Assembly: GCF_006345805.1 (NCBI RefSeq)
Contig: NC_043014.1
Span: forward strand, 16,802,001 to 16,866,000
Length of the DNA stretch: 64,000 bases
Direction of reading: 5' to 3'
From: Octopus sinensis
Taxonomy: Eukaryota
The position numbers were made by a program, and so were the translations under genes. Shown one piece after another: positions 16,739 through 43,937 of the stretch (the stretch's first letter is position 1; each line of letters begins with the position of its first letter). The notes beneath the pieces are model-generated. The model ran no database searches, was not told the DNA's origin, and saw nothing but the letters and a program-made list of their open reading frames with translations.

Positions 16739-17824
16739 GGATGATACAATTCTTATTTTGTAAAATACTTTTCCTATGTTAATCTCATAGTCATGCACAT
16801 TAGACCAAAAAAAAATAATAAATAAAAATGATTCTTCAACTAATTCAACTTCATTATCTGTGCAAAAAGACTAATAAATTGCCAAGGAATTTCAAGTTCC
16901 TAACTTCTTAAACCTTTGCCTGTCCAAAGTATTTCCATAAGTTTGTCCTAGAGTGTCTGTTCTTGTTTTCAAACCTTTTATTATTAAGTCATTATTAGGT
17001 CATTTGGCAGTTGAAACAAGTCTACTACTGAGTCTATCATTATGGGGACATAAACAAACCAGCATCGGTTGTTAGGCAGTGGTTGGGCACCAAACCTGGA
17101 CACCAAACTGTTAATTGTTAATTAACATTTTCGTTAATGATTTAACATCTAAGCTAACTTTGGAAATCATTATTGGACTAATTAATTTCCATTAATGTCA
17201 TTTGAATTGAAGTTAATGGATTTTAAAGGTGTGTTTTGATGGTTTTTAGAGCAAAAACCGATTTTTGTTCTGTAATAAAAATTGTTAACGGTTTATTGAT
17301 AACTTGCGTTACTTTAGGTAATAATTGACTGATTAATGGTTATCGAAGTTAACTTTTCAATTAACAGTTCCCAGCTTTGTTAGAGACAAACAAAAATTTA
17401 CAAATATACACACACACATATATATATACATATACTTTTTGTTTTTCCCCTCACTGTATAATTTTTTATTTTTTTTTTGCAATTAGCTTAATTTGATGCT
17501 CATTGCATTAAAAATATTAACACCAATATAATTAACCTTTTTGTTACTATATTTCAACAGAAATATACCTCCTTTGTTTCAATTAATTTTGAAACTAACC
17601 CAGAATTTTATAAACTTGACTTATAAAGCTGGTATTTAGAACACAAATAACTAAGAAATTTTTATGAAAGTTCTAATTTAGATCACATTAAAACGGAGTT
17701 TGTAACATAGAACCTGGGCTAGTTTCAAAAGTGATTTGGTATCCTTTAAATTTTGTTATTCGGTATGTGTCCTGTTTAATGTTGTTTATTGATAAATGTA
17801 ACAAACAAAAAATATATATTGTAG

Positions 17825-17941
17825 GCTGCAGTTGCAAACAAAAGATTAAAAGAGGCATTAAAGAAGCAAGCTCTTGTCAGGAATGATCGCAACAATAATT
17901 TTGAAAGATATGACGCTAGTGCAAATGCAACAAAATTAAAG
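17825..17941 (+). CDS. KIF4: KIF4-like exon (AAVANKRLKEALKKQ..TKLK), GC donor
   Basis: tgtag acceptor; 117 nt, phase 0-0; AAG|gcatga. Confidence 0.85.
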
Positions 17942-20900
17942 GCATGATGGGTTTTGTTTTTGTTGAATTTTGTATGAATGTAAAAGGAATTTCAGTAATT
18001 TAGTTCCTCTCCTGATTGTGAAAGGAACTTTGATATTTAACCCCGAGTCAACCTTGATTGAATAAATGGATGATGAAAGGAATTCTAACTGTGAACCATA
18101 TCATTTGGGGTTTTTTTTTTTTTTAACCTATCGATATTTGTGATTTGTTGGTGATTTTGTCGCTTGTTCTAGCAGTTAAAGTGGGTGTGGCTAAATTTGA
18201 GTATAAGAATACAACAAAAAGCCTTTTCGCATTTAGATTACTCTGTCAAATTTAATACTTATTTATTGACATTGTTTTGAATTAGTCATGTGTTATCTCG
18301 TAGCCTTGAGATTTCAGTGATGCAATTGTTTATATTTAGAATGACATTGTAGGGTGGGTGTGAGAGGATAGATCTGGCCAGTTTGACAATAAAACAGGTA
18401 AAATATTCAATCTGGCTCATTTAAATGCTTAAGGATTAACTATTTAATATCCAGTTATAATTTTTTTTTGTTTCTTGTTTCATTTTTAATGTATAACTTG
18501 TAGGATGATCATTATTATCTTTGTTCCTCTATGATTGCATATATAATCTCTTCTTTTATGTATACTTTAAGAAATGTCTTTTTCCAATCTCTGATGTGTT
18601 TTTATCTATACGATTGAGTAACAAAAACAAGAAAAAAAGATAAAATGTTTGTATTACTAAAGGTTTTACATGATTATTGTATCAAACATGACAGAGAAAA
18701 ATGTTAAGAATTTAAGGGTTATTAAACACCCATGTCCTTGTTTAATACCAATAGTTTCCACCTATAGTGAAGTTTTCTACCAACATACACTTTGCTTCTT
18801 TACATACACACACACATCTAGTAGAGAATTTGATTATATTGACAAAGCAAAGTGTAACTTCTTACGATCGTTACTAAGTTTGGGTGTAACTACTTAGAAT
18901 TGTAAAAGCTTTTTTTTTTTGTAATTGTTTCAATGATAACTAAATATATAAACCAATAAAAAGCATTATAAATCAGGAGTTACCTCAGGATCATTTCCTT
19001 TATGATGATGTCTATGCATAGATGTTTTTGACAAGAAAGTAATACATATAATTATATTTATATAATGTTAGACACTATTGGAACAAGAATTGGAAGTGAA
19101 AGTTCGAGTCCAGGAAGCAAAATACCACTTAAAGAATTTGGTTGAAGACCGAAAAACTTTGTCTTTGGAGTTGAGGCACTTGAAAAATTCAAATCCACCT
19201 ACAAAGGTTGGTGTTTTTTGTTTATAATTTTACTTATAAAGTTTAAAATTTATATTAAGGAATTTAAGGTATAAAGGTCTGTATGGAAAAGAATGAGAAA
19301 TTTAAATGAAGTGATCCCATCTAGGATTTCATGGAAAGTTGTTAGTGTTGCTAAAATATGTAGAACAATCATTCGTTCATCTTCTCCACTTGCTATTTCT
19401 AGAAGAATCTTGGAGGTAGAGTCCTCAGGCATCCCTTCCATAGGGTCCTATCAGAAGTAACCAAAATTACATGCTTCAGCAGGATGAGAAATTTAAATGA
19501 AGTGATCCCATCTAGGATTTCATGGAAAGTTGTTAGTGTTGCTAAAATATGTAGAACAATCATTCGTTCATCTTCTCCACTTCCTATTTCTAGAAGAATC
19601 TTGGAGGTAGAGTCCTCAGGCATCCCTTCCATAGGGTCCTATCAGAAGTAACCAAAATTACATGCTTCAGCAGGATGAGAAATTTAAATGAAGTGATCCC
19701 ATCTAGGATTTCATGGAAAGTTGTTAGTGTTGCTAAAATATGTAGAACAATCATTCATTCATCTTCTCCACTTGCTATTTCTAGAAGAATCTTGGAGGTA
19801 GAGTCCTCAGGCATCCCTTCCATAGGGTCCTATCAGAAGTAACCAAAATTACATGCTTCAGCAGGATTACCAAATATGATGAACTGGCATTGGATGCTAT
19901 TCAACCAACTCATTCTTTGGTCTACCCATAGGTCCCCTGCCAATTGGCATGGCTTGAAGAATCCATCTTGGGATTCTTTCTTGTAACATTCACCTCGTGC
20001 TGGTGACATGTTAGAAGCACCATTTGAGCGTGGCCATTGCCAGTGCCACCTGACTGGCTCCCATGCTGGTGGCACGTAAAAAGCACCCACTACACTCATG
20101 GAGTGGTTGGTGTTAGGAAGGGCATCCAGCTGTAGAAACTTTGCCAGATCAGATTGGAGCCTGGTGCAGCCTCTTGACTTGCCAGTCACCAGTCAAACCG
20201 TCCAACCTATGCCAGCATGGAAAGCAGACTTTAAACGATGGTGATGATGTCCATGGTGCCAGAGCTGTGACCTCCCAATGTAGAGAAGCAACAGCTCAGC
20301 CTGGAGGGAAGGAGGGAGAGACCCCCTGAACCCTTGAGTTATGCATCTTGTCAAGTAACTTTACTCTGAAGAGTAATGTTTGGAAGAATCCCATTTCAGC
20401 TAATTGCATTCACAATTCTACTCTTTTTGGTCATTACCTGGCATTCAAGACCATAGGGGAGGTTAGGCATGGAAACCAAAATGAAAGTAGTGAGTTTGGC
20501 TACTTTGTATTCTTTTAACCAGTTTCTTCCCTTTGGAGGATCAGACACTGGAACTGGCACATTATTGTGCCAACACCTGCAATTCTAGCATCCCATTCAG
20601 CTTCATGTTTCCCTGTATTCTTGAGATACTTAAACTTCTCCACTTGTCTCAGTGATTCTTTCTTTTATTCTTTTACTTGTTTCACACTCTGGGATGCGGC
20701 CATGCTTGGGCACTGTTTCAAAGGGTTTAAGTTGAATGAAGTAATCCCGGTGCTTTTTTTTTTTTTTTAAAGCCTGTTATTCTGTCAGTCACTTAGGTCA
20801 AACTGCTAAGTTATGGGGATGTAAACAAACCAGTACTGGTTGTCAAGTAGTAGTGGTGAGACAAATACAAAGATGCACACACACGCTAATATGATGGGGG

Positions 20901-23900
20901 TTCTTTCAGTCTGCATCTGCCAAATTCAGTCAATGCATCAGTTCATGGCTATAGATGAAACTTGCATAAGATGGCACGCAGTGGCACTGAACTCCAAATC
21001 CTGTAGTTGGGAATTAAACTTCTTACCACACAGCCAAGCTGCACCTGATGTAAAAATTTAAAAATAAATTTTAATGAATTCCATTTTCAGAAACGTATAA
21101 CAACTGATGGTGATGGCAGTCCAAAGGAGGTGAACATTAGTATCATAAAGTTAACTGATGAAATTAATGACAGGTTTGTGTTTGTATGTTAATTTTCTGA
21201 ATGCTAATGTTACTATATTTCTGTTAAAATGTATTGTTTTCATTCCATTTTGTTTTCAAAACCGATGAAGAATTTAGTAAACTAACTACGAGGTGCATTC
21301 CAGAATTTTTGAGACTTTTTCAGGAGGGACACTTATTAATTTCAAAGAAATACAAAACACTATTCTCCTTCAAAGTAGTATCATCTCCCTTCAATGCTCT
21401 TGCAACTCTCCAGCCCCTTTGTGTAGGACTTCAGGGTGAAGATGTCAGGACCCTTGTTGCAGCTTCCTCCAGTTTGGGGAACAACCAAAAATCACAGGGA
21501 GCAAGGTCTGGGTTGCACGGAGAGCGAGGGACAGTTTTGATGTCCATCTCTACCAGGATAGAATTATGGACTGGTGCATTGTCCTGATGGAAAGTGCTCT
21601 GGCATTTTGCAACAAAATCTCTTCCTAAATCCCGCCGAACCACCACAAGGCACTTTTTGTTGAGGAAACCTAGTGGATGTAGATGATGCTGTTGCTTTTG
21701 AAAAGCAGGGATCATAACAAGCTTCTTGGTGGACTTGCTTTCTCTGGCCTTCCATTGGGCACTGTGCCTCTTGGTCGCTGGATCATAGAAGTAGATCCAG
21801 ATTTCGTCATAGCTCACCTGAGACTCAAGTGCTCTTCGTTTGGAGGTAATGAGCTCAACCATCTCCCTGCTGTCACCAATGCTTTATTCCTTCTGTTCAT
21901 CAGTGTGCACCTCAAGAACAAGCTTTGCACAAATTTTACTCGCGTTCAGATCTTCATGAATAGTCCTGTGTTCACTTGCTACACCAATTCCAAACTATAT
22001 GCTTCTTGTCATTGTTCCTCACCTTAAAGAGCTTTGATGCACTTGTGCCAGCAAAAAGCAAATGCTCAGCTCACACATGTTAATCCGTGACCAGTCTGGA
22101 GCATTTCATAATTTTCTGTAGCATTTTTGCCTAGTTTTAACACAAAACATGGTAAGCTTCCAAATGGTCATGTCTCAACTGTATTCTGCAAACCAGTCAG
22201 CTGTGACAAGCAGTGTTTTGTAGGGTGTGTTCAAAATACTGCTACAGCCATCTCCTTCAATCTGGAATAATAATAAAAAAAAAAAGTTGGTGGCAGGTCA
22301 GCTTATTAGATGTATCATAATGATATACAGAAATTCAATAATGCAATATAGTTACAATTGTCGCTCCTGAAAAAATCTCAAAACTTCTGGAATGCACCAT
22401 TGTGTTTGTGTGTCCTTGTTTTGACATTGTTTGGTAGTTGTGAATGAGGGCTACCGTCAAAATAAGCAGTGTCATTCTCCAATATTCTGTCAGAAATTGA
22501 TGCCTTTTTAAAAAATCTTGTTGCTGGGGCACCACATTGAACTGTATCAACCCCAGTACTTTTATGTTTTTAAAACCTGGTACTTATTCTATTGGTCTCT
22601 TTGGCTGAACTGCTAAGTTACAAAGGTGTAAACACAAACACCAGTTGTGGAGTGGGGTGAAGAGACAAAACATGCATGTAGATATACATATATATATATA
22701 TGACGGGCTTCTTTCAGTTTCCGTCTACCAAATCCATTCACAAGGCTTTGGTTGGCCTAAGGCTATAGTATAAGACACTTGCCCAAGGTGCCACACAGTG
22801 GGTCTGAACCCAGAACCATGTGGTTTGGAAGCAAGCTTCTTACCACACAGCCATGCCTGCTTATACATAATTCTGTGGATATGTAATATGAATCTAAAAT
22901 CCTTTATATTCTTAAACTTATTGCTATTTTCAATACTATTTCGCATATATTATAGAAATGTTCAAATTGCCACTCTTCAATCAGAAATCCAAGAGGCAGA
23001 AAATGGTAAGAATTAATTCTGATTTCTTTTATTTTTTTGTTATTCCAGTCATAATTTTTTCTTTCTATAAATTTAATTTTTCTTACATATATTTATTGCA
23101 GACATTAATATTAACCTTTTCTCTAAAATCTTGACAAATTCTTTCTTTTAGATAAATTCAAAGGATGTGTTGAAACAATCCGTAGCATAAACGATTCATA
23201 TTTTTCTTATCTCAACCGTTTAGATTTCAGATTATTCTGTCCAATGTGACGCTTATTTATCCACATTGTGTTGAATCAATCATGTATTTGTTTAGTGTTA
23301 GAATGGCACTGTAAGGTTGGTGTGATATGCCAGATCTGGCTGATCTGAGCATAAAATAAGCAGGCTATATGAGTTGGATCTGATCCACCACATAAAATAG
23401 GTGGAATATTTGAGCTGGATGTAGCCAATGTAAATGCTAAAAAGTTAAAAGAGGATATATATCATCATCATCAACACTCTGAGAGTGTAGTGGGTGCTTT
23501 TACGTGTCACTGGCATGAGGGCCAGTGTGGTGGTACTGGCAATGGCCACACCCAAATGGTGCTTTTTACGTGCCACCTGCACAGGAACCAGTCCAGCGGT
23601 AGTGGCGACGACCTTGCTCAAATATTTCACATGCCACCAGCACAAGTGCTAGTAAGGTGACGCGGTAATGATCACACTTGAATGGTGTGCTTAACATGCC
23701 ATATATATAAATAAATGTATGTGTATTTTTTCACTGTTTACAAATAACATGGGAAAAATAAATAAACAGTTACCAGGGTAGCAAAAATTCACACAAGTAC
23801 CAAGGATATAACAGCCTACTTATAAAGGTAGAAACTCCAGGTTTTGGTGAAATGTTTTTATATCACATAGATAAATAAATAAATGGAGTTAAATGCAGGT

Positions 23901-26900
23901 GTTATTAAAATTTTTAATGATTTTAATAACATCTGCATTTAACCCCATTTATTTATTTATCTATATATATATATATTCACTCACAATTTAGTAGTTCTCT
24001 ACAAAACATGCTTCTTATTGAAGTAAATATTTATATATAGCTAGAATGGCAATAATTTTCCATCTAACTTCAAGTTTTCAGTTCCTTTAAGACAGATTTT
24101 AACACAGTCCACTCGACTGTTGGTTTTTTATTTATTTATTTATTTATTGCAATGTCACTTGCAGGTGAATTAATGTCTTGTAATTTTTCATATTCTCATG
24201 CAGTCACATTAATTAAATCTCTTCCATGCAGAGTATCAAAGAACGGATTGACCACAATAATGACAAGTCTACTGTAAAAGACCTTAAAAATAATTATGTG
24301 GAAGCTATCAAAGAGAAAGACTCAAGTGAAATGAAAGTGAAATCATTACAAAATCAGCATGAATCAAATCTTGTGGACTTGCAGCAGAAATATGAAAGCA
24401 AGGTAACTTTTAAATTATTAATCCGAAAACACATGTAAGTACTTACATATGTATGTGTGCACAAATAGTGGTGCCCCAGCATGGCCACAGCTCATGAGCT
24501 GAAACTAGATAAAATAAAATAAAAAAAATAAAAAAAGCACAAACTTAAACTCATTGTTATTACATCATCGTCATCATCATCATTGTTTTATTGTTCACTT
24601 TTTCATTCTTATGAGTTGGACGAAGTTTAGTTTAGGCAGATTTTCTACAGCCAGACGCCCTTTGGTGTTGCCAACTCTCACCTGTTTTCAAATAAGGTAT
24701 TATATCTCTCCATGGCCAATCACGTTCTTGCAGAATATTGGAAATGAAACATGCTGCTATGTGAAACAACAACAAGCATTTATGATTAACATGCAATATC
24801 AAGTCAAGGAGATACGAGCATACACGTTTGTACAGGCATACATTCTAACACATCTTTCAGCTTCTGTGTATCTAGTCCACTTACAAGGCATTGGATGGTC
24901 CAGATGATGCTTGCCCATGGTGCCACCCAATGGGACTGAACCTAAAATCACGTGTTTGAGAAGTGTACTTCTTAACCACACAGTCATGTTATCTATAATA
25001 TAAATTGGACATGGGCAATCGTTGTATTCTTTCTTGTCTTGAGGTTCACAGCCAAACGGCTGGGTGGATTCGCGTGAAAAATGGCACACATGTGGGGAGG
25101 TGCATAGATTGGAATGCAGTTTGTATTTTTTTCCTAGTGCCCATACTTACTGAAAAAATTGATTAAAACTTTTCTAATGGAATTCCCCCTCTTTCTTTCG
25201 CCATAAAAACAACCAGTTATTTAGAAGCTGTTTTCTGACAGGGTGGGGTCAGGAAATGTTCATATAGCAGGGGACCCAAAATGATAAGGTTGAGAAACGC
25301 TGTTATAGATTATGCCTAATCGAAAACGATTATATATATATATATATATATACGAGCAGCTAAGCCCAGTTTCACATGGTCTGTTTGGATGATGTGGCTG
25401 TGATCGTTTTCGATTAGGCGTAATCTATAACACCGTTTCCCAACCTTATCATTTTGTATGTAGGACTACATAACTCAATGAGTCTTTTCTTTTGGGACAT
25501 GTGGCTGTTATTTTTAACAGGTCAATCTACCCACTTAGAATCTGGTGTGTATCACAGTATGGGGGAAACAAACACTGATTGTGTCAAGCAGTGTGGGTGA
25601 GCACACATGATAGGCTTCTTAGCAATTTCTGACTCCCAGAGCATCGTTCAGTCTGGGGCTGTAGCAGAAGGCTCTTGACTGAGGTGTTGTGCAGTGGTAC
25701 TGAACCTGAAACCATATGGTTGGTAAAATGAGCTTTGTAACCACATGGCCATACCTGTATTTCATCATTATCATCAGTTAATATCCATTTTCCGTGCTGG
25801 CATGGGTTGGATGGTTTGACAAGAGCTGGCAAGACCAAGGGCAACACTTGGTTCCATATTCTGTTTTGGTATGGTTTCATCATCATCATCATCGTTTAAC
25901 GTCCGTTTTCCAGATGTTAAACGATGATGATGATGAAATCATACCAAAACAGAATATGGAACCAAGTGTTGCCCTTGGTCTTGCCAGCTCCTGTCAAACC
26001 ATCCAACCCATGCTCGCTTTCATTGTTTGGATATCCTTCCTAACTCTTTACAGAGTGTACAGGGTGCTTTTTATGTGGTACAAGCTCTGACATGACTACC
26101 TAGTACCCTGCCAGCCAAGAACTCCTCAACTGGGATAGGGAGAGTGGCATTTAAGATGGTATGGCTTTGTGCTAGTTGAAAGATTTGAGGTATAGAGAGG
26201 ACAGACGTAGATGTTGTCTGTGGCAGTTTTTAACAAATGGTAAGTTTGAATTTGTTTAAATTACAGATATCGTTTTTACTAAAACAACTGCAAAATGGGT
26301 CAGAGGAAGAAGAGAGCCCAGTGCCAAATGGTGTACGCGGAGCACATAATGTTAGTAGTTATTTTTCTTTTTTTCTGTTTCTCTTTTAACCGTTTAGCTT
26401 TCAAATTTCTTTGTCCAATTTATTTGTTTCTTTATTGCCCACAAGGGGCTAAACATAGAGGGGACAAACAAGGACAGACAAACGGATTAAGTCGATTACA
26501 TCGACCCCAGTGCGTAACTGGTACTTAATTTATCGACCCCGAAAGGATGAAAGGCAAAGTCGACCTCGGCGGAATTTGAACTCAGAACGCAACGACAGAC
26601 GCAATACCGCTAAGCATTTCGCCCTGTGTGCTAACGTTTCTGCCAGCTCGCCGCCTTTGTCCAATTTATTGCTTCTTTCTTCACATTGTTTTGGAATTAA
26701 TCATGCATTATTTCATGGCTTCAAGATTTCAATGGTGTTTGTATATTTTTAGAATGACATTGTAGGTACGTGTGAGAGGTTGAATCTGGTCAGTTTTAAC
26801 TTAGAACAGGTAGAGTATTTTTGCTGGATATGGCCAGTTTAAATGCTTAAGGGTTAAATATTTCCTCAAATATTTCTTATTTTTCAACTTAGCTGATATT

Positions 26901-29900
26901 AATTACAATTTGAATTGTGTGATAAATTTAAAAAAAGACTCCTTGCAATGTTTTTGCACTAGAAATGAAGTTAATTTTTTTATGTCCCAGGGAGACTGGT
27001 GTCTGTGACTAATGCCACTTTACTATGTCATTTAGTCTTTTGGGACTTAAAGATTTTAAATGATATTTTGATGACAAAATTTCAGCATTTAGATATCATC
27101 ATCCACTTTCCCTTGGTTGCATGAATTGGACTGGAATTATGATGGTAGATTTTTCTATGACTGGATGCCCTTCCTGTCACAAACCTTTGCCTTTTCTAAG
27201 CAAGCTAATATTTCACCAAGCCCAGGCATATTTTTGCACAATACTGGAAATGAATGTTTTAACAATCATGTGATGTTAAGAGAGGCACTTGCACACACTG
27301 ATATTTCTTCATGTTTCTGTCTTAGGAGATAAACTCACAAGGCTTTGGTTGGCCTGGGGCTATAAGACACTTGCCTAAGGTATGGTTGAACCCAAAATTG
27401 GTTGGGAAGCAAACTTCTCAATCACACAGCTACATCTGTATTTATCTATGGATGGATAATTAAATAAAAAAATTCGTTATCAAAGACTAAATTTGGAAAG
27501 TATATATCAAATAACGATAATAAAAGTTTTAATTTTCATATTTATTGACTATTTTTGTATATCTATTTCTTTTTAGACCTTTTTTGTTCCTGACACTCTA
27601 GATGTTTTAGATAATGACCCAGACTATCACCCTGATAGCTCCATGGAATTCGACACACCTTATATGAAAGTGACCTAGAAACAAGCAAAACCTGTGAGTT
27701 TAGAATTTTTCAAAATTTACACTTCATATTTGGCTGTAATCAACTCTGGCTATTACACACATTCTGTCAGGAATTCTTTATGCTTGTGATTTTTTTTTAT
27801 TCTTTTTTTTTTCTGTAATTTACACAGTTTTATGTGATGCTTATTTCCATTTGTAATAATTTATGAAATTATGGCTTGAGTCAGTCTTCACAAATGATGG
27901 ATGCTTAAGGTCCAATACTAGTAAATGGAGGAGTTTTGGTAGTTTAGATTATCTCCCCTTCTCACATGGTGCTGGTCTTAAATTACTATTTGGTAATTGT
28001 GGCACATCCTCTAGAAGCAGAGAATTTTAATAAATCAAGAATTTTTATTGTATGGTATTTGATATACCCATATTTGTCTACAATGTACATATACATGCTA
28101 CTGGCTTCAATTATTTCTCTTGGCTCACTTTTTGTTTAGATTAAGAAACAACCTAAAAGCATTCCTTACCCCCCCCCCCCTTCACAGTGTAAAGGATAGA
28201 GGAGAAAATAATGAAAATGGTATTTCTTTTCTTTTTAATTTACTTGAGTCAGAAAAGAACGCTTGGTGCCCATTTTCTCTTGCAGACCCTTCAAGACCAC
28301 TGGTTCTTAACTTCTTTTTTTAGCACTCCTTTTTAAGTAGTTGTTATGCCTAGTTCTCCTCTAAGTGATGTTTGAGGTATCACAACTTACTTAACTGAAC
28401 AGAGATGATAATCTTACTCTAAAAGTGGATTGTATAAGCTTTTAACAGTGAAAAGATCAAAAAATTGATAAAGACACAAGTTGTAAATTTACTTTATACA
28501 AGTTAGTGACTTCCCTGTACCGGATGAGGTCTCATTTTATTTTAATAACCATTACTAGGTTTATTATGTATAATATAATTACTACTATTGGTAGAATTTA
28601 GTATGTTTATTATGTTACCTCACTGCACCTCCTTGGAGGTGGGATTACCTTCTTTGAGAACCTCTGCTCTGGACAGATATAAATTAATGTCTGAATAAGG
28701 AGGAAATTCTAGACATTTGCTTTCCTGGTAGTGAAATGTTCTAGCAACGTACAGCAAGAGTTGTGGGGAAACGACCATAGATTATCGTATTGGGAAAGGG
28801 TCCAGTACCAGCTTTCATGACATTTTCTTGTTGGAATTTAAAATTTTCTCTGGAGATCTAACTGAGTTTTGTAATATTAAAAGGATTATTCTTGATAAAT
28901 AATATTCGTTTAAGCCTTTCGATACCAACCCAGCTGAAACTGCCTCTGGCTCTGTAGTACAAATGTCTTGTTGCCATAAATTTTGAATTAAAATCTTCCA
29001 CCAAACCTTAGTCACAATTTATGTTCCTAACACTAGCTTAATAATAACTAAGTTATTTTACTAAATTCTTTGTTATATCTGAAATAATTGAAAGAAACAC
29101 AGAGCATCTCAACAGAAATATGGTAACAAAAGGGTTAAATGAATATATGTACTGTGTTGTTTGCAATATTCTGTGAAATTAAATATTTTTAGGCAATTGT
29201 TTGCAAGTTAAACTTGCAATGTTATTAGAGTTGGTTAGAATGGGTACATATGACTTGAAAAAAAGGGTTTGATATCAAAAAGGGCAGAGATTAAGGAGTA
29301 GTGATAGGGCAGAGAATTCAAAGAATGATAAAGGTAGGAAGATGAAAGGGTATTAGGAATGTGTAGGTGGAGAAATGAAAAGATATCCGAAGCATGTGGG
29401 TTGAGAAGTGAGAAGGTGTTGGGGGTATATGGACATGGTGTTGGGAAGCTATTGGGAAAAGTGGGTGGAGAAACACAAATATTAGAAAATAGATAGAGGT
29501 AAAAGGCTATTGGGAGTAAGTGGAGAGAATGGTCAAAAGATATCAAGTGTAAGTGGGTGGAGCAATAAAAGCATATTGGGAATAATTGTCAAATTCTGAA
29601 GTGAGGAGATATATTTTTCTCATTAGAACTTTTTTTGTTTTTCTATTTCAGTTGAAAAGTTGCAGGTGTTTACTCAGTAAATGCAAATCCAAAGTTTGCC
29701 CATGTTTCAAGAAGACAGCGTTCTGTTTGCCTTCATGTTCTTGTGCTAATTGTGAAAATAAGGTATTTTAATTATTATTGTTGTTGTTGTTGTTTGGGGT
29801 AAAGCGGAGAGCTGGCAGAATCGTTAGCATGCCAAGCAAAATGCTTAGTGGTATTTCGTCTGCCGCTACACCCCGAGTTCAATTTCCGTTGAGGTTGACT

Positions 29901-32642
29901 TTACCTTTCGTCCTTTCAAGATCGATAAATTAAGTACTGGTGGAACACTGAGGTTGATGTAATCAATTAGCCCCTTGACCCCAAACTCCAGGCCTTGTGT
30001 CTTTAGTAGAAAGGATTATTATTGTTTGGAGTGAAATGCTGCTGAGGTCAATTTTGCCTTTCATCCTTTGGGGCGGGGTGTGGGGTCAATAAAATAAATA
30101 CCAGTGGGGCACTGGGATCAGTGTAATCAACCTCTCCACCCCTCAAATTTCAGACTTTGTGTCAAAATAAGGATAGTTATTATTAGAGTTCAAACTCCAC
30201 CAAGTAGACTTTAACCATTCATCCTTTTTTTGGGGTGGGGGTGGAGAGAGTTGATAAAATAGTACTAATTGCAAACTGGATCAGTCATCATCATCATCAT
30301 CATCGTTTAACATCTGTTTTCCATGCTGGCATGGGTTGGACGGTTTGACTGGGGTCTGGCAAGCCAGGAGGCTGCACCAGGCTCCAGTCTGATCTGGCAG
30401 TGTTTCTATAGCTGGATGCCCTTCCTAACGCCAACCACTCCAAGAGTGTAGTGGGTGCTTTTTACATGCCACTGGCACGGAAACCAGTCAATGCAGCGCT
30501 GCCATCGGCCACGTTCTGATGGTGCTTTTTACATTCCACCGGCATTTGATTTTGGTTTTGATGTACTTGACTCAATAGGTCTCCTCAAGCATGGCATGTC
30601 ACCCTACAATCCAAGGTACTTTTGAGTGGGCTGGTTATGCGACACTGGTGTAGGTTACAGCTGTGAACTCACTTTATTTGCCGGGTCTTCTCAGTCACAG
30701 GTTTCAGTCTTTTGTCTTTGCCTCTGTGAGGCCCAACGTTTGAAGGTCATGCTTGACCACCTCATTACATGTCTTCCTGGGTTTACCTCTACCCCGGATT
30801 CCTTCAACTGTTTGGGCGTGGCACTTCTTCACACATCTCTCCTCATCCATCCGTAGTACATGACATTACACATCCAGTGAATCATACTAGCTTCATTTCT
30901 TTCAAGCCTACGCATGTCTTCAGCAGTTACGGCCCATGTTTCACTGCCATGAAGCATTGCAGTTCATATACATGCATCGTACAATCTACCTTTCACTCTG
31001 AGCGAGAGGCCCTTTGTCACCAGCAGGGGTAGAAGCTTTCTGAATTTTGCCCAGGCTATTCTTATTCTAGTGGCAATGCTCTCTGAGCATCCACCCTCAC
31101 TATAGACTTGGTCACCTAGGTAGCAGAAGCTATCAACTACTTCTAGTTTCTTCTCCTGGAATTTGATGGAATCAGTTTTCTGAGCATCTGTAGTGTTTAT
31201 TGTCTCTGTGCATCTGCTGCACATGAAAGCTATCTTCTCAATTAATCTTCCTTTGATGTTGCTGCACTGCTTATGTGCCCATAGCTTACACTGGGTACAT
31301 CTAATGGTGTTTCTACCTACACCTTTTCTACAGATTGAGCAGGGCCACCTACCTGAAGGGGTGTGTGATGTGTTCGCCTTCCAAGTGAACTTTGGTCTTT
31401 ACGACATTGACTCTAAGGCCCTTCAATTCTAAACCTTGCTTCCAAACCTGAAATTTCTTCTAGTTCTGGTAGGGATTCTCTGAGGGTCAGGTCATCAGCA
31501 TAGAGGAGCTCCCAGGGGCAACCTGACTTGATAAGTAATTGATTTACCCTCCACCCTTTAAAATTGCTGGCCTTGTGCTGCACAAGTGTTGGATCTCATG
31601 GAGGCAATGACCAAGACCTTTGGCATTATGTCGTGCTTGAGAAAATGACACATCAAGCTGAGCAAAATTGCAGTCATGGCACATAAAAGCACCCATTACA
31701 CTCTCAAAGTGGTTAGCATTAGGAATGGCATCCAGCCATAGAAAGTCATGCCAAATCAGACTGGAGCCTGGTGCAGCCTTCCAGTGTGCCAGCCCAGTCA
31801 AACCTTCTATCCCATGTACAGCTCCTAGGGGCTAAAAGTGGTTCATAGTGGCTAGATGTGTATCTTGGACTCATAGTAGATAGAAATATGAGGAACCCAT
31901 AGTGGCTAGATGTGTATCTTGGACTCTTATTAGATAGATGTATGAGGAGCCCATAGTGACTAAATGTATGATTAACTTCTGGTGGCTGGCTGTGTATGAT
32001 GGACTCTTTTGTGACAAGATGTAGTGGACTCCCAGAGACTAGATGTGTCTGATGGACTCTTAGTTAATAGATGTATGATGGACTCTTAGCAGACAGATGT
32101 TTCATGGTTAACTCCTAGTGACACACACACACATGATAAGCTTCTTTCATTTTCCATCTGCGAGATGCACTCACAAGGCTTTGGTTGACCCAGGCTATTG
32201 TAGAAGACGAGTATCTGAGGTGCCATGCAGTGGGACTGAACTCTGCATGGCCACACCTTTGCTTGATTGTAGATATTTGAAAAAAGAAAAGAAAAAGGTC
32301 TGAATAAGAGCTATTTCTGGTGTACACTGTTTGAATGTGATGGAATTGACAGTATTGGGTTGGAGATGTTTTGGGATTTGTTAACCCATACTGTGGTGGA
32401 GAGTGAGTGTGCTGCATGAAATTTGGAAAGAAAGGAAAATGGCAAATGTAGAGTGGTTCTTCTTTATCCTTTCCTTCTACACCATTACCTATGAATGATT
32501 AATTGTGCCAGTTGTGTTTTTATAATGATTTTTCAATTAAATATTGACAACGTTCTTCTTTCTGTTCTTTCAGCCGACATCTGTATTTGACTCATCCACC
32601 AGCGATGTGGACAACGAAAATGAAGACAGACTGATAGAATAA
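17825..32642 (+). CDS. KIF4: KIF4/chromokinesin-like locus, C-terminal half only (10 exons; one broken, one with in-frame TAG; may be a pseudogene)
   Basis: Colinear matches to KIF4 stalk and tail: AAVANKRLKEAL, EAKYHLKNLVEDRKTL, RNVQIATLQ, ISFLLKQLQ and the Cys-rich CRC-C-SKVCPC-K-C-SCSC-NCEN tail; splice phases consistent except after 23152. Confidence 0.85.
19072..19206 (+). CDS. KIF4: KIF4-like exon (TLLEQELEVKVRVQEAKYHLKNLVEDRK..PPTK)
   Basis: atgttag acceptor, gttggt donor; 135 nt, phase 0-0. Confidence 0.9.
19293..19865. repeat. Three near-identical tandem copies of a 191-bp unit that includes a LINE 3' end
   Basis: Unit starts atgagaaattt at 19293, 19484, 19675; only a few substitutions; continues into an RTE C-terminal remnant (ERIPRWILQAMPIGRGPMGRPK on minus). 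Confidence 0.95.
21091..21173 (+). CDS. KIF4: KIF4-like exon (KRITTDGDGSPKEVNISIIKLTDEINDR)
   Basis: ttttcag acceptor, gtttgt donor; 83 nt, phase 0-2, fits both neighbours. Confidence 0.8.
21287..22270 (-). mobile_element. Mariner (Tc1/mariner) transposase remnant; right end approximate
   Basis: DEIWIYFYDPATKRHSAQW, FHQDNAPVH, PCNPDLAPCDFWLFPKL motifs; tacgagg terminus at 21287. Confidence 0.9.
22956..23005 (+). CDS. KIF4: KIF4-like exon (RNVQIATLQSEIQEAEN)
   Basis: tatag acceptor, gtaaga donor; 50 nt, phase 2-1; matches KIF4 RSAQIADLQQKLLDAES. Confidence 0.85.
23152..23210 (+). pseudogene. KIF4: KIF4-like exon start (DKFKGCVETIRSINDS) running into a MITE with no phase-0 donor
   Basis: tctttcttttag acceptor, phase 1 as required; aligns to KIF4 DRPKQRWENIATI; in-frame TGA at 23247 inside the MITE. 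Confidence 0.6.
23867..23964. repeat. Hairpin, 45-bp arms, 8-nt loop
   Basis: 23867-23911 vs 23920-23964, two mismatches. Confidence 0.9.
24232..24402 (+). CDS. KIF4: KIF4-like coiled-coil exon (SIKERIDH..LQQKYESK)
   Basis: ccatgcag acceptor, gtaact donor; 171 nt, phase 0-0. Confidence 0.85.
25277..25456. repeat. Inverted repeat, 54-bp arms (25277-25330 / 25403-25456)
   Basis: caaaatgataaggttgagaaacgctgttatagattatgcctaatcgaaaacgat vs its near-complement. Confidence 0.9.
25800..26013. repeat. Near-perfect hairpin of about 100 bp made from an RTE 3' end
   Basis: Arms 25800-25903 and 25913-26013, 9-nt loop, three mismatches and one ATC-unit indel. Confidence 0.95.
26267..26350 (+). CDS. KIF4: KIF4-like exon (ISFLLKQLQNGSEEEESPVPNGVRGAHN)
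   Basis: ttacag acceptor, gttagt donor; 84 nt, phase 0-0; matches KIF4 VLYLLSQLQ. Confidence 0.8.
27577..27693 (+). CDS. KIF4: KIF4-like exon with in-frame TAG (TFFVPDTLDVLDNDPDYHPDSSMEFDTPYMKVT*KQAKP)
   Basis: ttctttttag acceptor, gtgagt donor; 117 nt, phase 0-0; TAG at 27676-27678; position corresponds to the acidic ..KVSRK segment before the Cys-rich tail. Confidence 0.75.
28910..29138. mobile_element. piggyBac-type MITE, second family
   Basis: taagcctttcgatacc .. ggtaacaaaaggg|ttaa; related fragments at about 17533-17710 and 21200-21285. Confidence 0.6.
29652..29762 (+). CDS. KIF4: KIF4-like Cys-rich tail exon (LKSCRCLLSKCKSKVCPCFKKTAFCLPSCSCANCENK)
   Basis: ctatttcag acceptor, gtattt donor; 111 nt, phase 0-0; Cys spacing of the KIF4 cysteine-rich domain. 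Confidence 0.9.
30287..31480 (-). mobile_element. 5'-truncated RTE-clade LINE (ORF2 C-terminus, 3' UTR, (GAT)n tail)
   Basis: KLEVVDSFCYLGDQVYSEGGCSESIATRIRIAWAKFRKLLPLLVTKGLSLRVKGRLYDAC; catcatcatc tail at 30287. Confidence 0.9.
31845..32105. repeat. Degenerate minisatellite (core agatgt(gt)at..tggactc)
   Basis: catagtggctagatgtgtatcttggactc repeated exactly twice, then shorter variants. Confidence 0.8.
32574..32642 (+). CDS. KIF4: KIF4-like terminal exon (PTSVFDSSTSDVDNENEDRLIE*)
   Basis: tctgttctttcag acceptor, phase 0; TAA at 32640-32642 lies in SINE-like sequence. Confidence 0.65.
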   Translation, partial: PTSVFDSSTSDVDNENEDRLIE

Positions 32643-33203
32643 GTACTAGAATCGATTCAGTCAACTAAAAATTCTTCAAAGCAGTGCCCCAGCATGGCCA
32701 CAGTCTAATGATTGAAACAAGTAAAAGATAAAAGACATATATCTTTATAGGTGCAGCTGTGGCTATATGGTAAGTAGCTTGCTTACCAACCACATGGTTC
32801 TGGGTTCAGTCCCACTGTGTGGCACCTTGAGTAAGTGTTTTCTTCTATAGCCTCGGGCCGACCAAAGCCTTGTGTGTGGATTTGGTTGATGGAAACTGAA
32901 AGAAGCCCGTCTTGCGTGTGTGTGTATTTGTTATTTGTGTGTGTATTTGTTATTTGTGTCTGTGTTTGTCCCTCCACCATCACTTGACAACCAATGCTGC
33001 TTTTGCTGAACTTATCAGTTCAGCAAAAGAGACTGATAGAATGAGTACTAGGCTTACAAAGAATAAGTCCTGGGGTCGATTTGTTTGACTAAAGGAGGTG
33101 CTCCAGCATGGCTGCAGTCAAATGACTGAAACAAATAAAAGAGTATTGTTATATTTCGGAATGGTCATAATAAATCTAATCGAAAAAAAAAAAAAATCTA
33201 ATC

Positions 33204-35243: not shown

Positions 35244-35343
35244 NNNNNNNNNNNNNNNNNNNNNNNNNNNNNNNNNNNNNNNNNNNNNNNNNNNNNNNNN
35301 NNNNNNNNNNNNNNNNNNNNNNNNNNNNNNNNNNNNNNNNNNN
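35244..35343. other. Assembly gap (100 N)
   Basis: Direct inspection. Confidence 1.
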
Positions 35344-35580
<237 letters not shown>

Positions 35581-36651: not shown

Positions 36652-37050
36652 AGGCGTAGGAGTGGCTGTGTGGTAAGTAGCTTGCTTACGAACCACATGG
36701 TTCCGGGTTCAGTCCCACTGCGTGGCACCTTGGGCAAGTGTCTTCTACTATAGCCTCGGGCCGACCAAAGCTTTGTGAGTGGATTTGGTAGACGGAAACT
36801 GAAAGAAGCCCATCGTATATATGTATATATATATATATGTGTGTATGTTTGTGTGTTGTGTTTGTCCCCCCAACATCGCTTGACAACCAATGCTGGTGTG
36901 TTTACGTCCCCGAAACTTAGCGGTTTGGCAAAAGAGACCGATAGAATAAGTACTAGGCTTACAAAGAATAAGTCCTGGGGTCGATTTCCTCGACTAAAGG
37001 CGGTGCTCCAGCATGACCACAGTCAGATGACTGAAACAAGTAAATGAGTA
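36652..37050 (+). mobile_element. Full-length family A SINE
   Basis: aggcgtaggagtggctgtgtggtaag head through gactgaaacaagtaaa tail. Confidence 0.9.
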
Positions 37051-37214
37051 TGGATGTGCTATCCCAGAAACAGCTGTAATAGTTCCAATTTACCTTACCC
37101 TAGTTAAATATTCTAAATGAATTGAGATACCTGCCCTGCCTTGAATTTTGTTGTCCTTTTGCCTCTAATATACATATGTACATATATATATATATATATC
37201 TTATACATATATGT

Positions 37215-42138: not shown

Positions 42139-42612
42139 AATTAGAGAAAAAACACTATTATATATATTATGTATTTATATTGTGAAATTTGGTTTATTAG
42201 TAAACTGAATTTTTCCCTGTAAGTTTGGAGTCATAAATGAGCGATGGCTAGAAGAATATTGAGCTTTATTTGATAAACAGCTGATCTAGTGGTCCGTGTT
42301 ATATAATCATCACAACAAACATGAACAATCAACGTCGCCCATTGTCTCCCTTGATAAAAGGACTTTCACTTTGTTTCCCGCCAAAAACAATTAACTTGTA
42401 CAACAACGGCAGTCGAATAAAGTATCTTGTATCGTTAACACGTTGTTTCAGTCTCTCTCATTTTCTTAATCTTTCATACTAAGTACTCACTACTTCCTTA
42501 ATACTCAATACATTATATATATATAACAACAACATTGTGTCAGAATACTAAAAGAACCCAAAATACAGAAACCAAAGGAAAAAAGAAGTTGAAATCATAC
42601 TTCAAAGACGAA

Positions 42613-43452
42613 ATGGAAAATTTACCGCATCCAAAAGACCTAGACTTTAATCAGGAAAATCTAGCCGCAGCATGGAAAAAGTGGAAAAAAGAATTCAATC
42701 TCTTTTTGATAGCCATAGAAAGTGACATGAAGCCAGACAAAGTAAAAACTTCAATGTTTTTAACTTGCATCGGTTCTAAAGGCCGAGATATCCATTCCAC
42801 ACTGGATTTCGATTCACCCGACGAAGAAATGAACCTTCAGACAGTAATCGAAAAATTCGATGCATATTGTGAACCCAGGAAAAACATAACTTTCCTAAGA
42901 CACAAATTCTTCACATGTGGACAAGCGGAACATCAAAAATTCGATGAGTACGTAGTAGAGTTGCGTCAAAAGGCACAACAGTGCGAATTCGGCAACCTCA
43001 CAGACAGTCTCACCAAAGATATTCTGATATGTGGAATCAGAGACATGAGATTAAGAGAAAGATTATTGAGAGAACCAAATTTAGACCTACAAAAAACAAT
43101 TCAAGCAGGTCAGAGTGCAGAGCAAACACGACTCCAATCAAGGATGCTAAATGCCACATCCGAAACAAGAGATAACGAAATCTCGAGGGTATATAGTCAA
43201 CACGACAGAAAAGGCGCCAAAACCCAAATAACCCGCCATATGCAATCCAGACATCGAAACGAACAAGCGGAAGTGACAGAAAGCCCGCGAAGTTTCAAGC
43301 GCCAAGTCAACACTACGTCACTAACTGTCACTATTGTGGTTATAATCACAAAAGAAATAAATGCCCAGCATTTCACAAGACATGTGAAAAATGCAAGAAA
43401 CAAGGACACTATGCAAAAATGTGCAAATCAAGAAAATTTGTACATAAAGTAG
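42613..43452 (+). CDS. gag: Gag (capsid region); shifts to the -1 frame between about 43197 and 43320 to reach the zinc knuckle
   Basis: MENLPHPKDLDF..AWKKWKKEF..YCEPRKNITFLRHKF..LRERLLREP; -1 frame gives CHYCGYNH..CEKCKKQGHYAKMC. Confidence 0.9.
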   Translation: MENLPHPKDLDFNQENLAAAWKKWKKEFNLFLIAIESDMKPDKVKTSMFLTCIGSKGRDIHSTLDFDSPDEEMNLQTVIEKFDAYCEPRKNITFLRHKFFTCGQAEHQKFDEYVVELRQKAQQCEFGNLTDSLTKDILICGIRDMRLRERLLREPNLDLQKTIQAGQSAEQTRLQSRMLNATSETRDNEISRVYSQHDRKGAKTQITRHMQSRHRNEQAEVTESPRSFKRQVNTTSLTVTIVVIITKEINAQHFTRHVKNARNKDTMQKCANQENLYIK

Positions 43453-43937
43453 AGATACATACCGACGATGAATCAGATGACGATACACATGCACTCGAAA
43501 TGATCACTGCAAATAATTCCCGCGTGCACAAAATCGAAAAGTTCAAGACTCCAAAAGACATTTGGACGGTCGAACTAAAAGTGAACAACTCGAATGTAAC
43601 ATTCAAAATAGATACAGGAGCAGACGTAACCGTACTGCCATTCAGAGAATATAGAAATATAATTCCAAAACCACAACTGCAAAAAACTTCAACTCGATTA
43701 TCAGCTTATAATAACACAGCTATAAAAGTGCTAGGAAAATGCACAGCAGTCATTAAATACAAAGAATTATCAAAGCAAATAAAATTCATTGTTGCAAAAA
43801 CAAACTCGCACGCAGTTATAGATGCAAAGACAGCTAAAGATCTGAACCTGATTCAGAGAATTTCAAAAATAAATTCGTCGAACAAAAAATCGATCACTAA
43901 ATGCCCCCCCCCCCCAGAATCCAAAGATTTCTACTAA
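43197..43937 (+). CDS. Zinc knuckle plus aspartic protease, fused in frame to the RNase H tail
   Basis: CEKCKKQGHYAKMC; FKIDTGADVTVLP; then directly KKSITKCPP with no YxDD RT domain. Confidence 0.9.
   Translation, partial: STRQKRRQNPNNPPYAIQTSKRTSGSDRKPAKFQAPSQHYVTNCHYCGYNHKRNKCPAFHKTCEKCKKQGHYAKMCKSRKFVHKVEIHTDDESDDDTHALEMITANNSRVHKIEKFKTPKDIWTVELKVNNSNVTFKIDTGADVTVLPFREYRNIIPKPQLQKTSTRLSAYNNTAIKVLGKCTAVIKYKELSKQIKFIVAKTNSHAVIDAKTAKDLNLIQRISKINSSNKKSITKCPPPPESKDFY

What the first reader, a model, noticed from the sequence alone, without database searches (positions are those of the whole stretch)
27577..27693. In-frame amber codon in a well-formed KIF4 exon: A-to-I recoding, poison exon or lesion
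Seen: strong splice sites, phase 0-0, KIF4-like acidic sequence, TAG at 27676 followed by five more sense codons; the downstream Cys-rich exon has all its cysteines intact. Known: UAG is the preferred ADAR triplet, editing gives UIG read as Trp (as at the HDV amber/W site), and coleoid cephalopods recode heavily. Inference: the Cys-rich tail could be made only when the stop is edited; alternatives are in-frame skipping (NMD-coupled cassette), a weak upstream donor AAA|gtgacc at 27670, a pseudogene mutation or a sequencing error.
Basis: partly seen in the sequence, partly recalled or inferred. Interest (0 to 1): 0.75.

Follow-up and report, generated by a model that had tools for sequence, protein, structure and literature searches.

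The report
Nonsense codon in KIF4 pseudogene copy
The in-frame TAG is real, but it lies in a broken, motor-less partial duplicate of the octopus KIF4A-like gene, whose intact copy on another chromosome has a lysine codon there, so it is an ordinary pseudogene lesion and not evidence for RNA-editing read-through.

Summary
Exon 27577-27693 has a strong acceptor and donor, is phase 0-0, and has TAG at 27676-27678 followed by KQAKP. The Cys-rich exon (29652-29762) keeps all 9 cysteines.

The locus is not the KIF4 gene. The window is Octopus sinensis CM016876.1, and 17522-32627 is a segmental duplicate, introns included and about 4% diverged, of the last 10 coding exons (aa 669-1001) of the intact KIF4A-like gene on CM016878.1 (XP_036367423.1, 1007 aa). 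That parent gene, its O. vulgaris orthologue and the Argonauta orthologue all have Lys (parent codon AAG) where the copy has TAG.

The copy has further damage:
- no motor domain
- a GT>GC donor on its first retained exon
- a 42-bp deletion that removes the 3' end and donor of exon 5 and breaks the KIF4 frame
- a truncated last exon

The O. vulgaris assembly carries the same TAG and the same deletion, so these are not sequencing errors. Exon and intron divergence are equal (4.07% vs 4.08%), and the nonsynonymous count fits a neutrally evolving copy. No dsRNA partner covers the TAG. NCBI and ENA both annotate short "uncharacterized" ORFs that end at this TAG.

Verdict: a nonsense lesion in an unprocessed partial pseudogene. 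Editing read-through is unsupported but was not tested at RNA level.

The parts
17522..32627 (+). Segmental duplicate, with introns retained, of the 3' part of the O. sinensis KIF4A-like gene. It corresponds to parent CM016878.1, locus L002 39536-56233.
   Evidence: Collinear blastn blocks at 90-96% identity. Substitution divergence is 4.07% in exons and 4.08% in introns. The window is identical to CM016876.1.
17825..17941 (+). Copy exon E1 (parent aa 669-707). Its donor has mutated from GT to GC at 17942-17943.
   Evidence: AAG|gcatga against parent AAG|gtatga. Neither public gene model uses this exon.
19072..19206 (+). Copy exon E2 (parent aa 708-752).
21091..21173 (+). Copy exon E3. The NCBI model starts its ORF here, at the ATG at 21158, in a frame different from the KIF4 frame.
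   Evidence: A TAA lies two codons upstream of the ATG in the NCBI frame.
22956..23005 (+). Copy exon E4. The KIF4 frame reads RNVQIATLQSEIQEAEN. NCBI reads it in another frame as EMFKLPLFNQKSKRQKM.
23152..23197 (+). Remnant of exon E5. A 42-bp deletion just after 23197 removed the last 31 nt of the exon and its GT donor. Skipping the 77-nt exon shifts the KIF4 frame.
   Evidence: deleted parent sequence is L002 44333-44374; the same deletion is in O. vulgaris. (donor TTC|atattt against parent AAG|gtaaga).
24232..24402 (+). Copy exon E6 (SIKERIDH...QQKYESK).
26267..26350 (+). Copy exon E7. It is skipped in NCBI isoform X2.
27577..27693 (+). Copy exon E8, the exon of the finding.
27676..27678 (+). 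TAG derived from the parental AAG (Lys941 of XP_036367423.1) by an A>T transversion at 27676. Both public gene models for this locus end here.
   Evidence: parent ACT AAG, copy ACC TAG. (P0001, P0002 and P0128 all end ...TPYMKVT). The O. vulgaris copy is identical at 197/197 bases.
29652..29762 (+). Copy exon E9, the Cys-rich Tesmin/TSO1-like CXC domain. It lies downstream of the stop and is in no annotated ORF. It differs from the parent at 1 nt (R>L).
32574..32642 (+). Remnant of the last exon (E10). Homology to the parent ends at 32627, so the last 7 parental codons are lost. The frame then runs RLIE to a new TAA at 32640-32642.

Best explanation
The TAG is a fixed genomic nonsense substitution (AAG Lys to TAG) in an unprocessed, partial, duplicated pseudogene of the octopus kinesin-4 gene (KIF4A-like).

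Shown here: a DNA-level segmental duplication copied about 16.7 kb of the parent gene's 3' end to another chromosome, covering its last 10 coding exons (aa 669-1001) with their introns. It did not copy the promoter, the motor domain or the first 668 codons. The duplication is much older than the O. sinensis / O. vulgaris split.

Inferred: the copy has since drifted neutrally. It acquired a GT>GC donor change, a 42-bp deletion that destroys the exon-5 donor and the ancestral frame, and the nonsense codon. It also lacks the last seven parental codons, because its homology to the parent ends inside the last exon. The strong splice sites and the intact cysteines are young, inherited sequence at about 4% divergence. 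They are not evidence of selection.

Not shown: whether the locus is transcribed. Annotation pipelines call short ORFs of 112-251 aa ('uncharacterized protein LOC118766905'), all of which end at this TAG. I could not see any transcript evidence behind those models.
For: 1. Identity of the locus. P0001 (XP_036366654.1, O. sinensis LOC118766905) maps at 100% to window exons and ends at the TAG. L003 from CM016876.1 is identical to the window.

2. An intact parent exists elsewhere. XP_036367423.1 (1007 aa) lies on CM016878.1 and has Kinesin, KIF21A_4th and TCR domains. No motor motifs occur in the window.

3. It is a DNA-level duplicate. Homology is collinear through the introns, window 17522-32627 against L002 39536-56233.

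4. Codon history. The parent has ACT AAG and the copy ACC TAG. The Argonauta KIF4A-like protein also has K there, in VTKKQAKP.

5. Not an assembly error. The O. vulgaris orthologous copy (OX597833.1, L001) is 197/197 identical across the exon, TAG included. It shares the 42-bp deletion, and its annotated protein P0128 ends at the same stop.

6. Other lesions. The E1 donor is GC, the E5 donor is deleted and the last exon is truncated.

7. Neutral evolution.
- Exon divergence is 39/959 = 4.07% and intron divergence 453/11108 = 4.08%.
- With the intron mutation spectrum, 23 nonsynonymous or nonsense differences fit a neutral copy plus a parent at omega 0.3-0.5 (19-22 expected).
- The same count rejects omega <= 0.3 on both lineages (P = 5e-5).
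- About 1.7 nonsense changes are expected under full neutrality of both lineages, and 1 is seen.

8. No editing substrate. No inverted-repeat arm overlaps the TAG within about +/-1.3-1.9 kb (window 26400-29600). The 301-nt local fold has z = -0.16.
Against: - Two independent annotations call a protein-coding gene here. NCBI gives two isoforms, which could reflect transcript evidence that I could not inspect. Transcription, and possibly translation of a short ORF, is therefore not excluded.
- The naive pairwise dN/dS against the parent is 0.285, which taken alone could be read as constraint. It is driven by an excess of synonymous differences: 19 against 10.5 expected (P about 0.01). One of the 19 is an artefact at the deletion boundary. 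These differences are concentrated in E1 and the E5 remnant.
- Polarising the amino-acid changes with Argonauta gives only a 2:1 asymmetry: 10 on the copy lineage, 5 on the parent lineage and 8 ambiguous.
- The copy differs between O. sinensis and O. vulgaris at 1/959 exon sites and 33/13643 intron sites. That is too few to test present-day constraint.
- No RNA data were available.
Confidence: 0.85

Rival explanations
1. The copy is a young functional gene. It would encode a short, motor-less coiled-coil fragment of the KIF4 tail (112-251 aa), with the TAG as its genuine stop. The Cys-rich exon would then be 3'UTR or unused DNA.
For: NCBI (P0001, P0002) and ENA (P0128) both annotate ORFs ending at this TAG. 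The O. vulgaris model keeps the KIF4 frame through a 17-nt remnant of exon 5, using the donor TGT|gttgaa. Pairwise dN/dS is 0.285, and E1 has 7 synonymous and 0 nonsynonymous differences.
Against: - The two annotations disagree on the start, the frame and the exon set. The NCBI ORF reads E3 and E4 out of the KIF4 frame.
- Neither ORF has a Pfam domain above its cut-off.
- Exon divergence equals intron divergence, and the nonsynonymous count fits neutrality of the copy.
- E1, the exon that looks most 'conserved', has a GC donor and is in neither model.
- The 17-nt exon depends on a weak donor.
Confidence: 0.1
2. Stop-loss A-to-I editing (UAG to UIG, read as Trp) extends the ORF into KQAKP, the CXC domain and the acidic tail.
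For: The U-A-G context is the ADAR-preferred triplet (established knowledge). UAG>UGG stop-loss editing events are reported in coleoid transcriptomes (PMC8382921). The downstream frame is open through E9 and E10 to the TAA at 32640, and the CXC cysteines are intact.
Against: - The ancestral residue is Lys, not Trp. The substitution is A>T at codon position 1, not a G>A change that editing could 'restore' (framework in PMC6881472).
- The K/R-rich patch at this position has no Trp in the ten other KIF4 homologues read by eye, nor in the Octopus parent and Argonauta proteins.
- No complementary arm or stable local structure covers the site.
- The upstream KIF4 frame is broken, so only an orphan ORF would be extended.
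- The intact state of E9 needs no selection. About 2 changes are expected on a neutral copy lineage in 111 nt at about 2% per lineage (my arithmetic), and 1 is observed.
Confidence: 0.03
3. Splicing removes the stop. Either the weak donor AAA|gtgacc at 27669|27670 is used (deleting 24 nt in frame), or the 117-nt exon is skipped in frame. The TAG-containing form would then behave as an NMD-targeted 'poison' isoform.
For: Both events are in frame. In-frame skipping of the neighbouring 84-nt exon E7 is annotated as isoform X2.
Against: - The same weak donor (AAA|gtgact) exists in the parent, and the parent's annotated protein does not use it, since it includes VTKKQAKP.
- The authentic donor CCT|gtgagt is unchanged and much closer to consensus.
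- No annotated isoform lacks E8.
- The parental exon has no stop, so this is not a conserved poison exon.
- The upstream frame is already broken.
Confidence: 0.02
4. The TAG is a sequencing or assembly error in the O. sinensis assembly.
For: None found here.
Against: The independently sequenced O. vulgaris genome (GCA_951406725.2) has the identical TAG and identical flanks, 197/197. It also shares the 42-bp deletion.
Confidence: 0.005

Closest known systems
Unprocessed (duplicated) pseudogenes, i.e. partial gene copies created by segmental duplication
   Same: Intron-exon structure and intron sequence are retained. An intact parent exists elsewhere in the same genome. The copy is truncated at both ends and carries a splice-site loss, a frame-breaking deletion and a nonsense codon. 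Exons have diverged as much as introns.
   Different: It is annotated as protein-coding ('uncharacterized protein LOC118766905'), not as a pseudogene, and it may be transcribed. Expression was not tested.
Kinesin-4 / chromokinesin KIF4A (O. sinensis XP_036367423.1; human KIF4A)
   Same: The copy shows about 90% amino-acid identity to residues 669-1001 of the octopus KIF4A-like tail. This covers the coiled coil, the acidic DPDYHPDSS segment, the basic patch and the CXC Cys-rich domain.
   Different: The copy has no motor domain, no neck and no first coiled coil. Its frame is broken, and it has a stop before the CXC domain. It cannot be a kinesin.
Coleoid stop-loss A-to-I recoding (UAG>UGG, Stop>Trp), with the hepatitis delta amber/W site as the textbook case
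   Same: An in-frame UAG is followed by an open, homologous reading frame, in a lineage with very heavy ADAR recoding (PMC8382921).
   Different: No dsRNA partner was found. The ancestral residue is Lys. The host locus is a decayed duplicate. No RNA evidence was available.
Poison (NMD-coupled) cassette exons
   Same: The exon contains a stop, and its length is a multiple of 3.
   Different: The homologous exon of the functional parent is constitutive coding sequence without a stop. The stop is a lineage-specific substitution in the copy, not a conserved regulatory feature.

Membership tests
Unprocessed partial (duplicated) pseudogene | An intact paralogous parent gene exists in the same genome. 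| tested here: met
   XP_036367423.1 (1007 aa, full domain set) lies on CM016878.1, and the window is on CM016876.1.
Unprocessed partial (duplicated) pseudogene | Homology extends through the introns, showing DNA-level duplication and not retroposition. | tested here: met
   Collinear blocks cover window 17522-32627 against L002 39536-56233, and 11,108 aligned intron sites are 4.08% diverged.
Unprocessed partial (duplicated) pseudogene | Disabling lesions relative to the parent. | tested here: met
   5' truncation with no aa 1-668, E1 donor GT>GC, a 42-bp deletion removing the E5 3' end and donor, AAG>TAG, and a truncated last exon.
Unprocessed partial (duplicated) pseudogene | Neutral evolution of the former coding sequence. 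| tested here: inconclusive
   Exon and intron divergence are equal, and the nonsynonymous count fits a neutral copy. Against this, there is a synonymous excess (pairwise dN/dS 0.285) and only a 2:1 lineage asymmetry. No nucleotide outgroup was available.
Unprocessed partial (duplicated) pseudogene | No functional protein product. | not testable with these tools
   No RNA-seq, Ribo-seq or proteome data were available. Annotations predict ORFs of 112-251 aa with no Pfam domain above cut-off.
A-to-I stop-loss recoding site | Genomic A read as G in RNA from the same individual. | not testable with these tools
   No read data were available. The protein database searches returned no transcript-derived protein for this locus.
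A-to-I stop-loss recoding site | The edited adenosine lies in a double-stranded RNA structure (an editing-complementary sequence). | tested here: not met
   None of the 11 inverted-repeat pairs in 26400-29600 overlaps 27660-27695. The 301-nt fold has z = -0.16, and 42 of 100 shuffles fold as well. Distant or imperfect partners cannot be excluded.
A-to-I stop-loss recoding site | Read-through joins two parts of one meaningful, selected ORF. | tested here: not met
   The downstream frame is open. The upstream KIF4 frame is broken at exon 5 and the motor is absent. Trp replaces an ancestral Lys.
Kinesin-4 (KIF4) family | N-terminal kinesin motor domain. | tested here: not met
   No P-loop, switch I or switch II motifs occur in any frame of the 64 kb. 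Homology to the parent starts at aa 669. The parent has PF00225 at 357 bits, and P0001 has no Pfam hit.
Kinesin-4 (KIF4) family | C-terminal coiled-coil tail with a CXC Cys-rich domain. | tested here: met
   It is present as DNA homology. The conceptual read-through hits PF03638 TCR at 27.3 bits, above the 23.5 cut-off. It lies after the stop.
Poison / NMD cassette exon | A stop-containing exon conserved as an alternative exon of a functional gene. | tested here: not met
   The homologous exon of the functional parent encodes Lys at that codon and is part of the 1007-aa protein.

The most novel reading that the evidence does not exclude
LOC118766905 is a transcribed, motor-less KIF4-tail paralogue shared by the O. 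vulgaris species complex. ADAR-mediated UAG>UIG stop-loss editing, or use of the weak donor at 27670, would conditionally append the CXC chromatin-binding domain. That would give an editing-gated decoy or regulator of the chromokinesin pathway.
Probability: 0.03. Interest if true: 0.6.

Novelty: new member of a known kind. Interest (0 to 1): 0.1.

Why it matters
It matters mainly as a caution.

Annotation: the locus is labelled a protein-coding 'uncharacterized protein' in two octopus annotations, but it is best read as a partial KIF4A-like pseudogene.

Cephalopod editing studies: the copy is about 96% identical to its parent. At ten exonic positions the copy has A where the parent has G. Parent-derived reads that cross-map onto the copy would mimic A-to-G editing at exactly those sites. 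The TAG is not one of them. Parental reads mapped there would show an A in place of T at 27676, not a G at 27677.

KIF4 biology: nothing here changes what is known. The real gene is intact and encodes Lys at this position.

Tried and rejected
1. Looked for the rest of KIF4 in the window. A motif scan of all six frames found no kinesin motor, and tblastn with the full-length orthologue found nothing upstream of aa 669. I rejected the idea that the motor exons simply lie further upstream, because homology to the parent, introns included, stops at window 17522 and the intact gene is on another chromosome.

2. First suspected an assembly indel, because E3 and E4 read as coiled coil in a frame different from the NCBI ORF. 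This was resolved as a real 42-bp deletion of the exon-5 donor, shared with O. vulgaris.

3. Sequencing error at the TAG: rejected, because the independent O. vulgaris assembly is identical.

4. Editing-complementary sequence: the inverted-repeat search and the local fold were both negative.

5. Selection on the post-stop exons: there are only 3 differences (0 synonymous) in 180 nt, so a separate dN/dS cannot be computed. The between-species comparison has 1 exon difference in total and no power.

6. The look-up of encoding contigs on P0003 (O. vulgaris parent) returned nothing, so I used the O. sinensis parent instead.

7. A literature search for LOC118766905 gave no papers.

8. Not done: I ran no further search on a hypothetical edited peptide. 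Earlier searches returned no transcript-derived proteins for this locus or its parent. No O. bimaculoides or other octopod genomic DNA was reachable to date the duplication.
Full report
**1. The observation**

- The acceptor is atttctttttag|ACC at 27577 and the donor is CCT|gtgagt after 27693.
- It is 117 nt, phase 0-0.
- Frame 1 reads TFFVPDTLDVLDNDPDYHPDSSMEFDTPYMKVT*KQAKP. The two other frames are full of stops.
- TAG occupies 27676-27678.
- The upstream exon ends at 26350.
- The downstream exon 29652-29762 encodes LKSCRCLLSKCKSKVCPCFKKTAFCLPSCSCANCENK, with nine cysteines.

**2. What the locus is**

A protein search with the three exons returned only two proteins. Both are Octopus sinensis 'uncharacterized protein LOC118766905', isoforms X1 (140 aa) and X2 (112 aa), and both end ...TPYMKVT, exactly at the TAG. 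They map to the window at 100% identity. A locus fetched from CM016876.1 is identical to the window. NCBI therefore treats this TAG as the ordinary stop of a small orphan ORF.

An exhaustive HMMER search with X1 found a 1007-aa protein that continues past that point as ...TPYMKVT-K-KQAKPLKSCRCLRSKC.... That protein is O. vulgaris 'chromosome-associated kinesin KIF4A-like'. Its 90% cluster also holds an O. sinensis protein, XP_036367423.1, encoded on a different chromosome, CM016878.1. It carries the Kinesin, Microtub_bd, KIF21A_4th and TCR (CXC) domains. O. sinensis therefore has an intact KIF4A-like gene elsewhere, with Lys at the position in question. The Argonauta hians orthologue also reads VTKKQAKP.

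**3. Anatomy of the copy**

No kinesin motor motif occurs in any frame of the window. tblastn with the full-length protein matches the window only from residue 669 onward, in ten exons.

blastn of the window against the parent locus (L002) shows one collinear block, window 17522-32627 against L002 39536-56233. It is 90-96% identical and includes the introns. This is a DNA-level segmental duplication of the 3' 16.7 kb of the gene, not a retrocopy.

I derived the exact parental exons so that they translate to the annotated protein, then aligned each to the window. Eight of the ten exons keep their parental GT/AG splice dinucleotides on both sides, and the E8 sites are identical to the parent's. 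Relative to the parent, the copy has these lesions:
- (a) It lacks everything 5' of the intron that precedes residue 669.
- (b) The donor of its first retained exon has changed from GT to GC (17942).
- (c) A 42-bp deletion after 23197 removes the last 31 nt of the 77-nt exon 5 and its donor.
- (d) AAG has become TAG at 27676, next to a silent ACT>ACC change.
- (e) Homology ends at 32627, inside the last exon. The last seven codons are replaced by RLIE and a TAA at 32640.

Lesion (c) explains why the NCBI ORF reads exons E3 and E4 in a non-KIF4 frame (MKLMTEMFKLPLFNQKSKRQKM instead of ...LTDEINDRNVQIATLQSEIQEAEN). Without exon 5 the ancestral frame is shifted.

**4. Not an error, and older than the species split**

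The O. vulgaris genome (GCA_951406725.2, OX597833.1) carries the orthologous copy. It is annotated as a 251-aa 'hypothetical predicted protein' that also ends ...TPYMKVT.
- It is collinear with the window, mostly at about 99% identity.
- It is 197/197 identical across the exon and its flanks, TAG included.
- It shares the 42-bp deletion.

The copy differs between the two species at 0.24% of intron sites, against 4.08% between copy and parent. The duplication and both lesions therefore predate the split of these sister species.

The two annotations disagree on the start, the frame and the exon use. The O. vulgaris model keeps the frame through a 17-nt piece of exon 5 with the donor TGT|gttgaa. 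That disagreement is typical of ORF-calling on a decayed locus.

**5. Mode of evolution**

Copy and parent differ at 41 exonic positions: 18 synonymous, 22 nonsynonymous and 1 nonsense. One search counted 19 synonymous, but one is an artefact at the deletion boundary.

Exon and intron substitution divergence are equal, at 39/959 = 4.07% and 453/11108 = 4.08%.

I applied the intron substitution spectrum (ts/tv 2.0) to the parental codons.
- Full neutrality on both lineages predicts 10.5 synonymous, 27.7 nonsynonymous and 1.7 nonsense differences.
- The observed 23 nonsynonymous-plus-nonsense changes fit a neutral copy with a parent at omega 0.3-0.5 (19-22 expected).
- They reject omega <= 0.3 on both lineages (P = 5e-5).
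- One nonsense change is about what neutrality predicts.

Some caveats remain.
- Naive NG86 dN/dS is 0.285, because synonymous differences are in excess (P about 0.01). They cluster in E1 (7 synonymous, 0 nonsynonymous) and in the exon-5 remnant.
- Polarisation with Argonauta assigns 10 amino-acid changes to the copy, 5 to the parent and 8 ambiguously.
- The Cys-rich exon shows 1 difference in 111 nt. A neutral copy lineage at about 2% predicts only about 2, so its intactness carries little weight.
- Divergence along the block ranges from 1.2% to 8.3% per 500 nt, with nothing special around E8 and E9.

**6. The editing hypothesis**

UAG>UGG stop-loss events are reported in coleoid transcriptomes (PMC8382921), so the idea is legitimate in kind. 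The specifics at this site are against it.
- The ancestral residue is Lys. The mutation is A>T at codon position 1, so editing would not be 'restorative' in the sense of PMC6881472. It would put Trp into a K/R-rich patch that is basic in the KIF4 homologues I read: octopus, Argonauta, oyster, scallop, starfish, Lingula and human (read by eye, not aligned).
- No inverted-repeat arm in 26400-29600 overlaps the TAG.
- The 301-nt local fold is no more stable than shuffles, z = -0.16.
- The upstream frame is already broken.

RNA-level editing itself could not be tested.

The same weak donor exists in the parent, where the annotated protein does not use it. No annotated isoform lacks E8.

**7. Comparison with known things, and verdict**

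The locus meets the structural definition of an unprocessed partial pseudogene: an intact parent, intron homology, truncation and multiple disabling lesions. Evolution is compatible with neutrality.
- It fails the defining feature of a kinesin, which is a motor domain.
- It fails two testable features of an editing-recoded stop: a dsRNA context, and a meaningful continuous ORF.
- It is not a poison exon, because the parental exon is plain coding sequence.

It is an unremarkable new example of a known kind. Its practical value is a correction to the annotation, plus a warning that ten copy-A / parent-G exonic sites could mimic A-to-G editing through cross-mapping.

My probabilities are about 0.85 for a pseudogene lesion, 0.10 for a functional short ORF with the TAG as its true stop, and a few percent for editing or splicing rescue.

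Noticed in passing
window 17825-17941 (E1) and 23152-23197 (E5 remnant): Differences from the parent in these two exon pieces are all synonymous: 7 of 7 in E1 and 4 of 4 in the E5 remnant. Yet E1 has a GC donor and is in no gene model, and E5 has lost its donor. Overall the synonymous differences exceed the intron-based expectation, 19 against 10.5 (P about 0.01). Some may have arisen on the constrained parent lineage. No nucleotide outgroup was available to polarise them.
   Followed up: partly
window 19293-19867: A 191-bp unit is repeated 3.0 times at 99% identity inside the copy's intron between E2 and E3. The parent lacks 382 bp here, so it has a single unit. This is a recent tandem triplication specific to the copy.
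   Followed up: partly
window 21619-22797: About 0.7 kb of extra sequence, in many pieces, lies in the copy's E3-E4 intron and is absent from the parent. A 143-aa ORF on the minus strand (21431-21862) overlaps its 5' edge and has no Pfam hit. This is probably a post-duplication insertion of a mobile element, but that was not confirmed.
   Followed up: partly
window 25330 / L001 16888-20559: The O. vulgaris copy has about 3.7 kb in the E6-E7 intron that O. sinensis lacks at window 25330. This is an indel between the two sister species.
   Followed up: no
window 42535-45337: Remnant of an LTR-retrotransposon: consecutive plus-strand ORFs with retroviral-type aspartyl protease hits below Pfam cut-offs, and integrase hits above cut-off (Integrase_H2C2 57 bits, rve 42 bits). 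A possible gag-like ORF upstream has no Pfam hit. No reverse-transcriptase domain appeared in the ORFs scanned. The element was not assembled or printed.
   Followed up: partly
window 35244-35343 and 35365-35580: A 100-N assembly gap is followed directly by a 71-aa ORF with tandem C2H2 zinc fingers (zf-H2C2_2 at 78.7 bits), built on an 84-bp tandem repeat. It is a fragment of a zinc-finger gene or array cut by the gap.
   Followed up: partly
window 32650-32733, 33010-33142, 36652-37052 and many other sites: Dispersed short repeats, apparently SINE-like, occur many times in both the window and the parent locus. One abuts the 3' breakpoint of the duplication (32650-32733). Another family member lies just left of the parental breakpoint (L002 39388-39527). 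Repeat-mediated duplication is possible but was not tested.
   Followed up: no
exonic positions 17848, 19178, 19192, 22980, 23177, 24271, 24307, 24351, 24368, 26346: At these ten sites the copy has A and the intact KIF4A-like parent has G. Parent-derived RNA reads mis-mapped to the copy would look like A-to-G editing at exactly these positions.
   Followed up: yes
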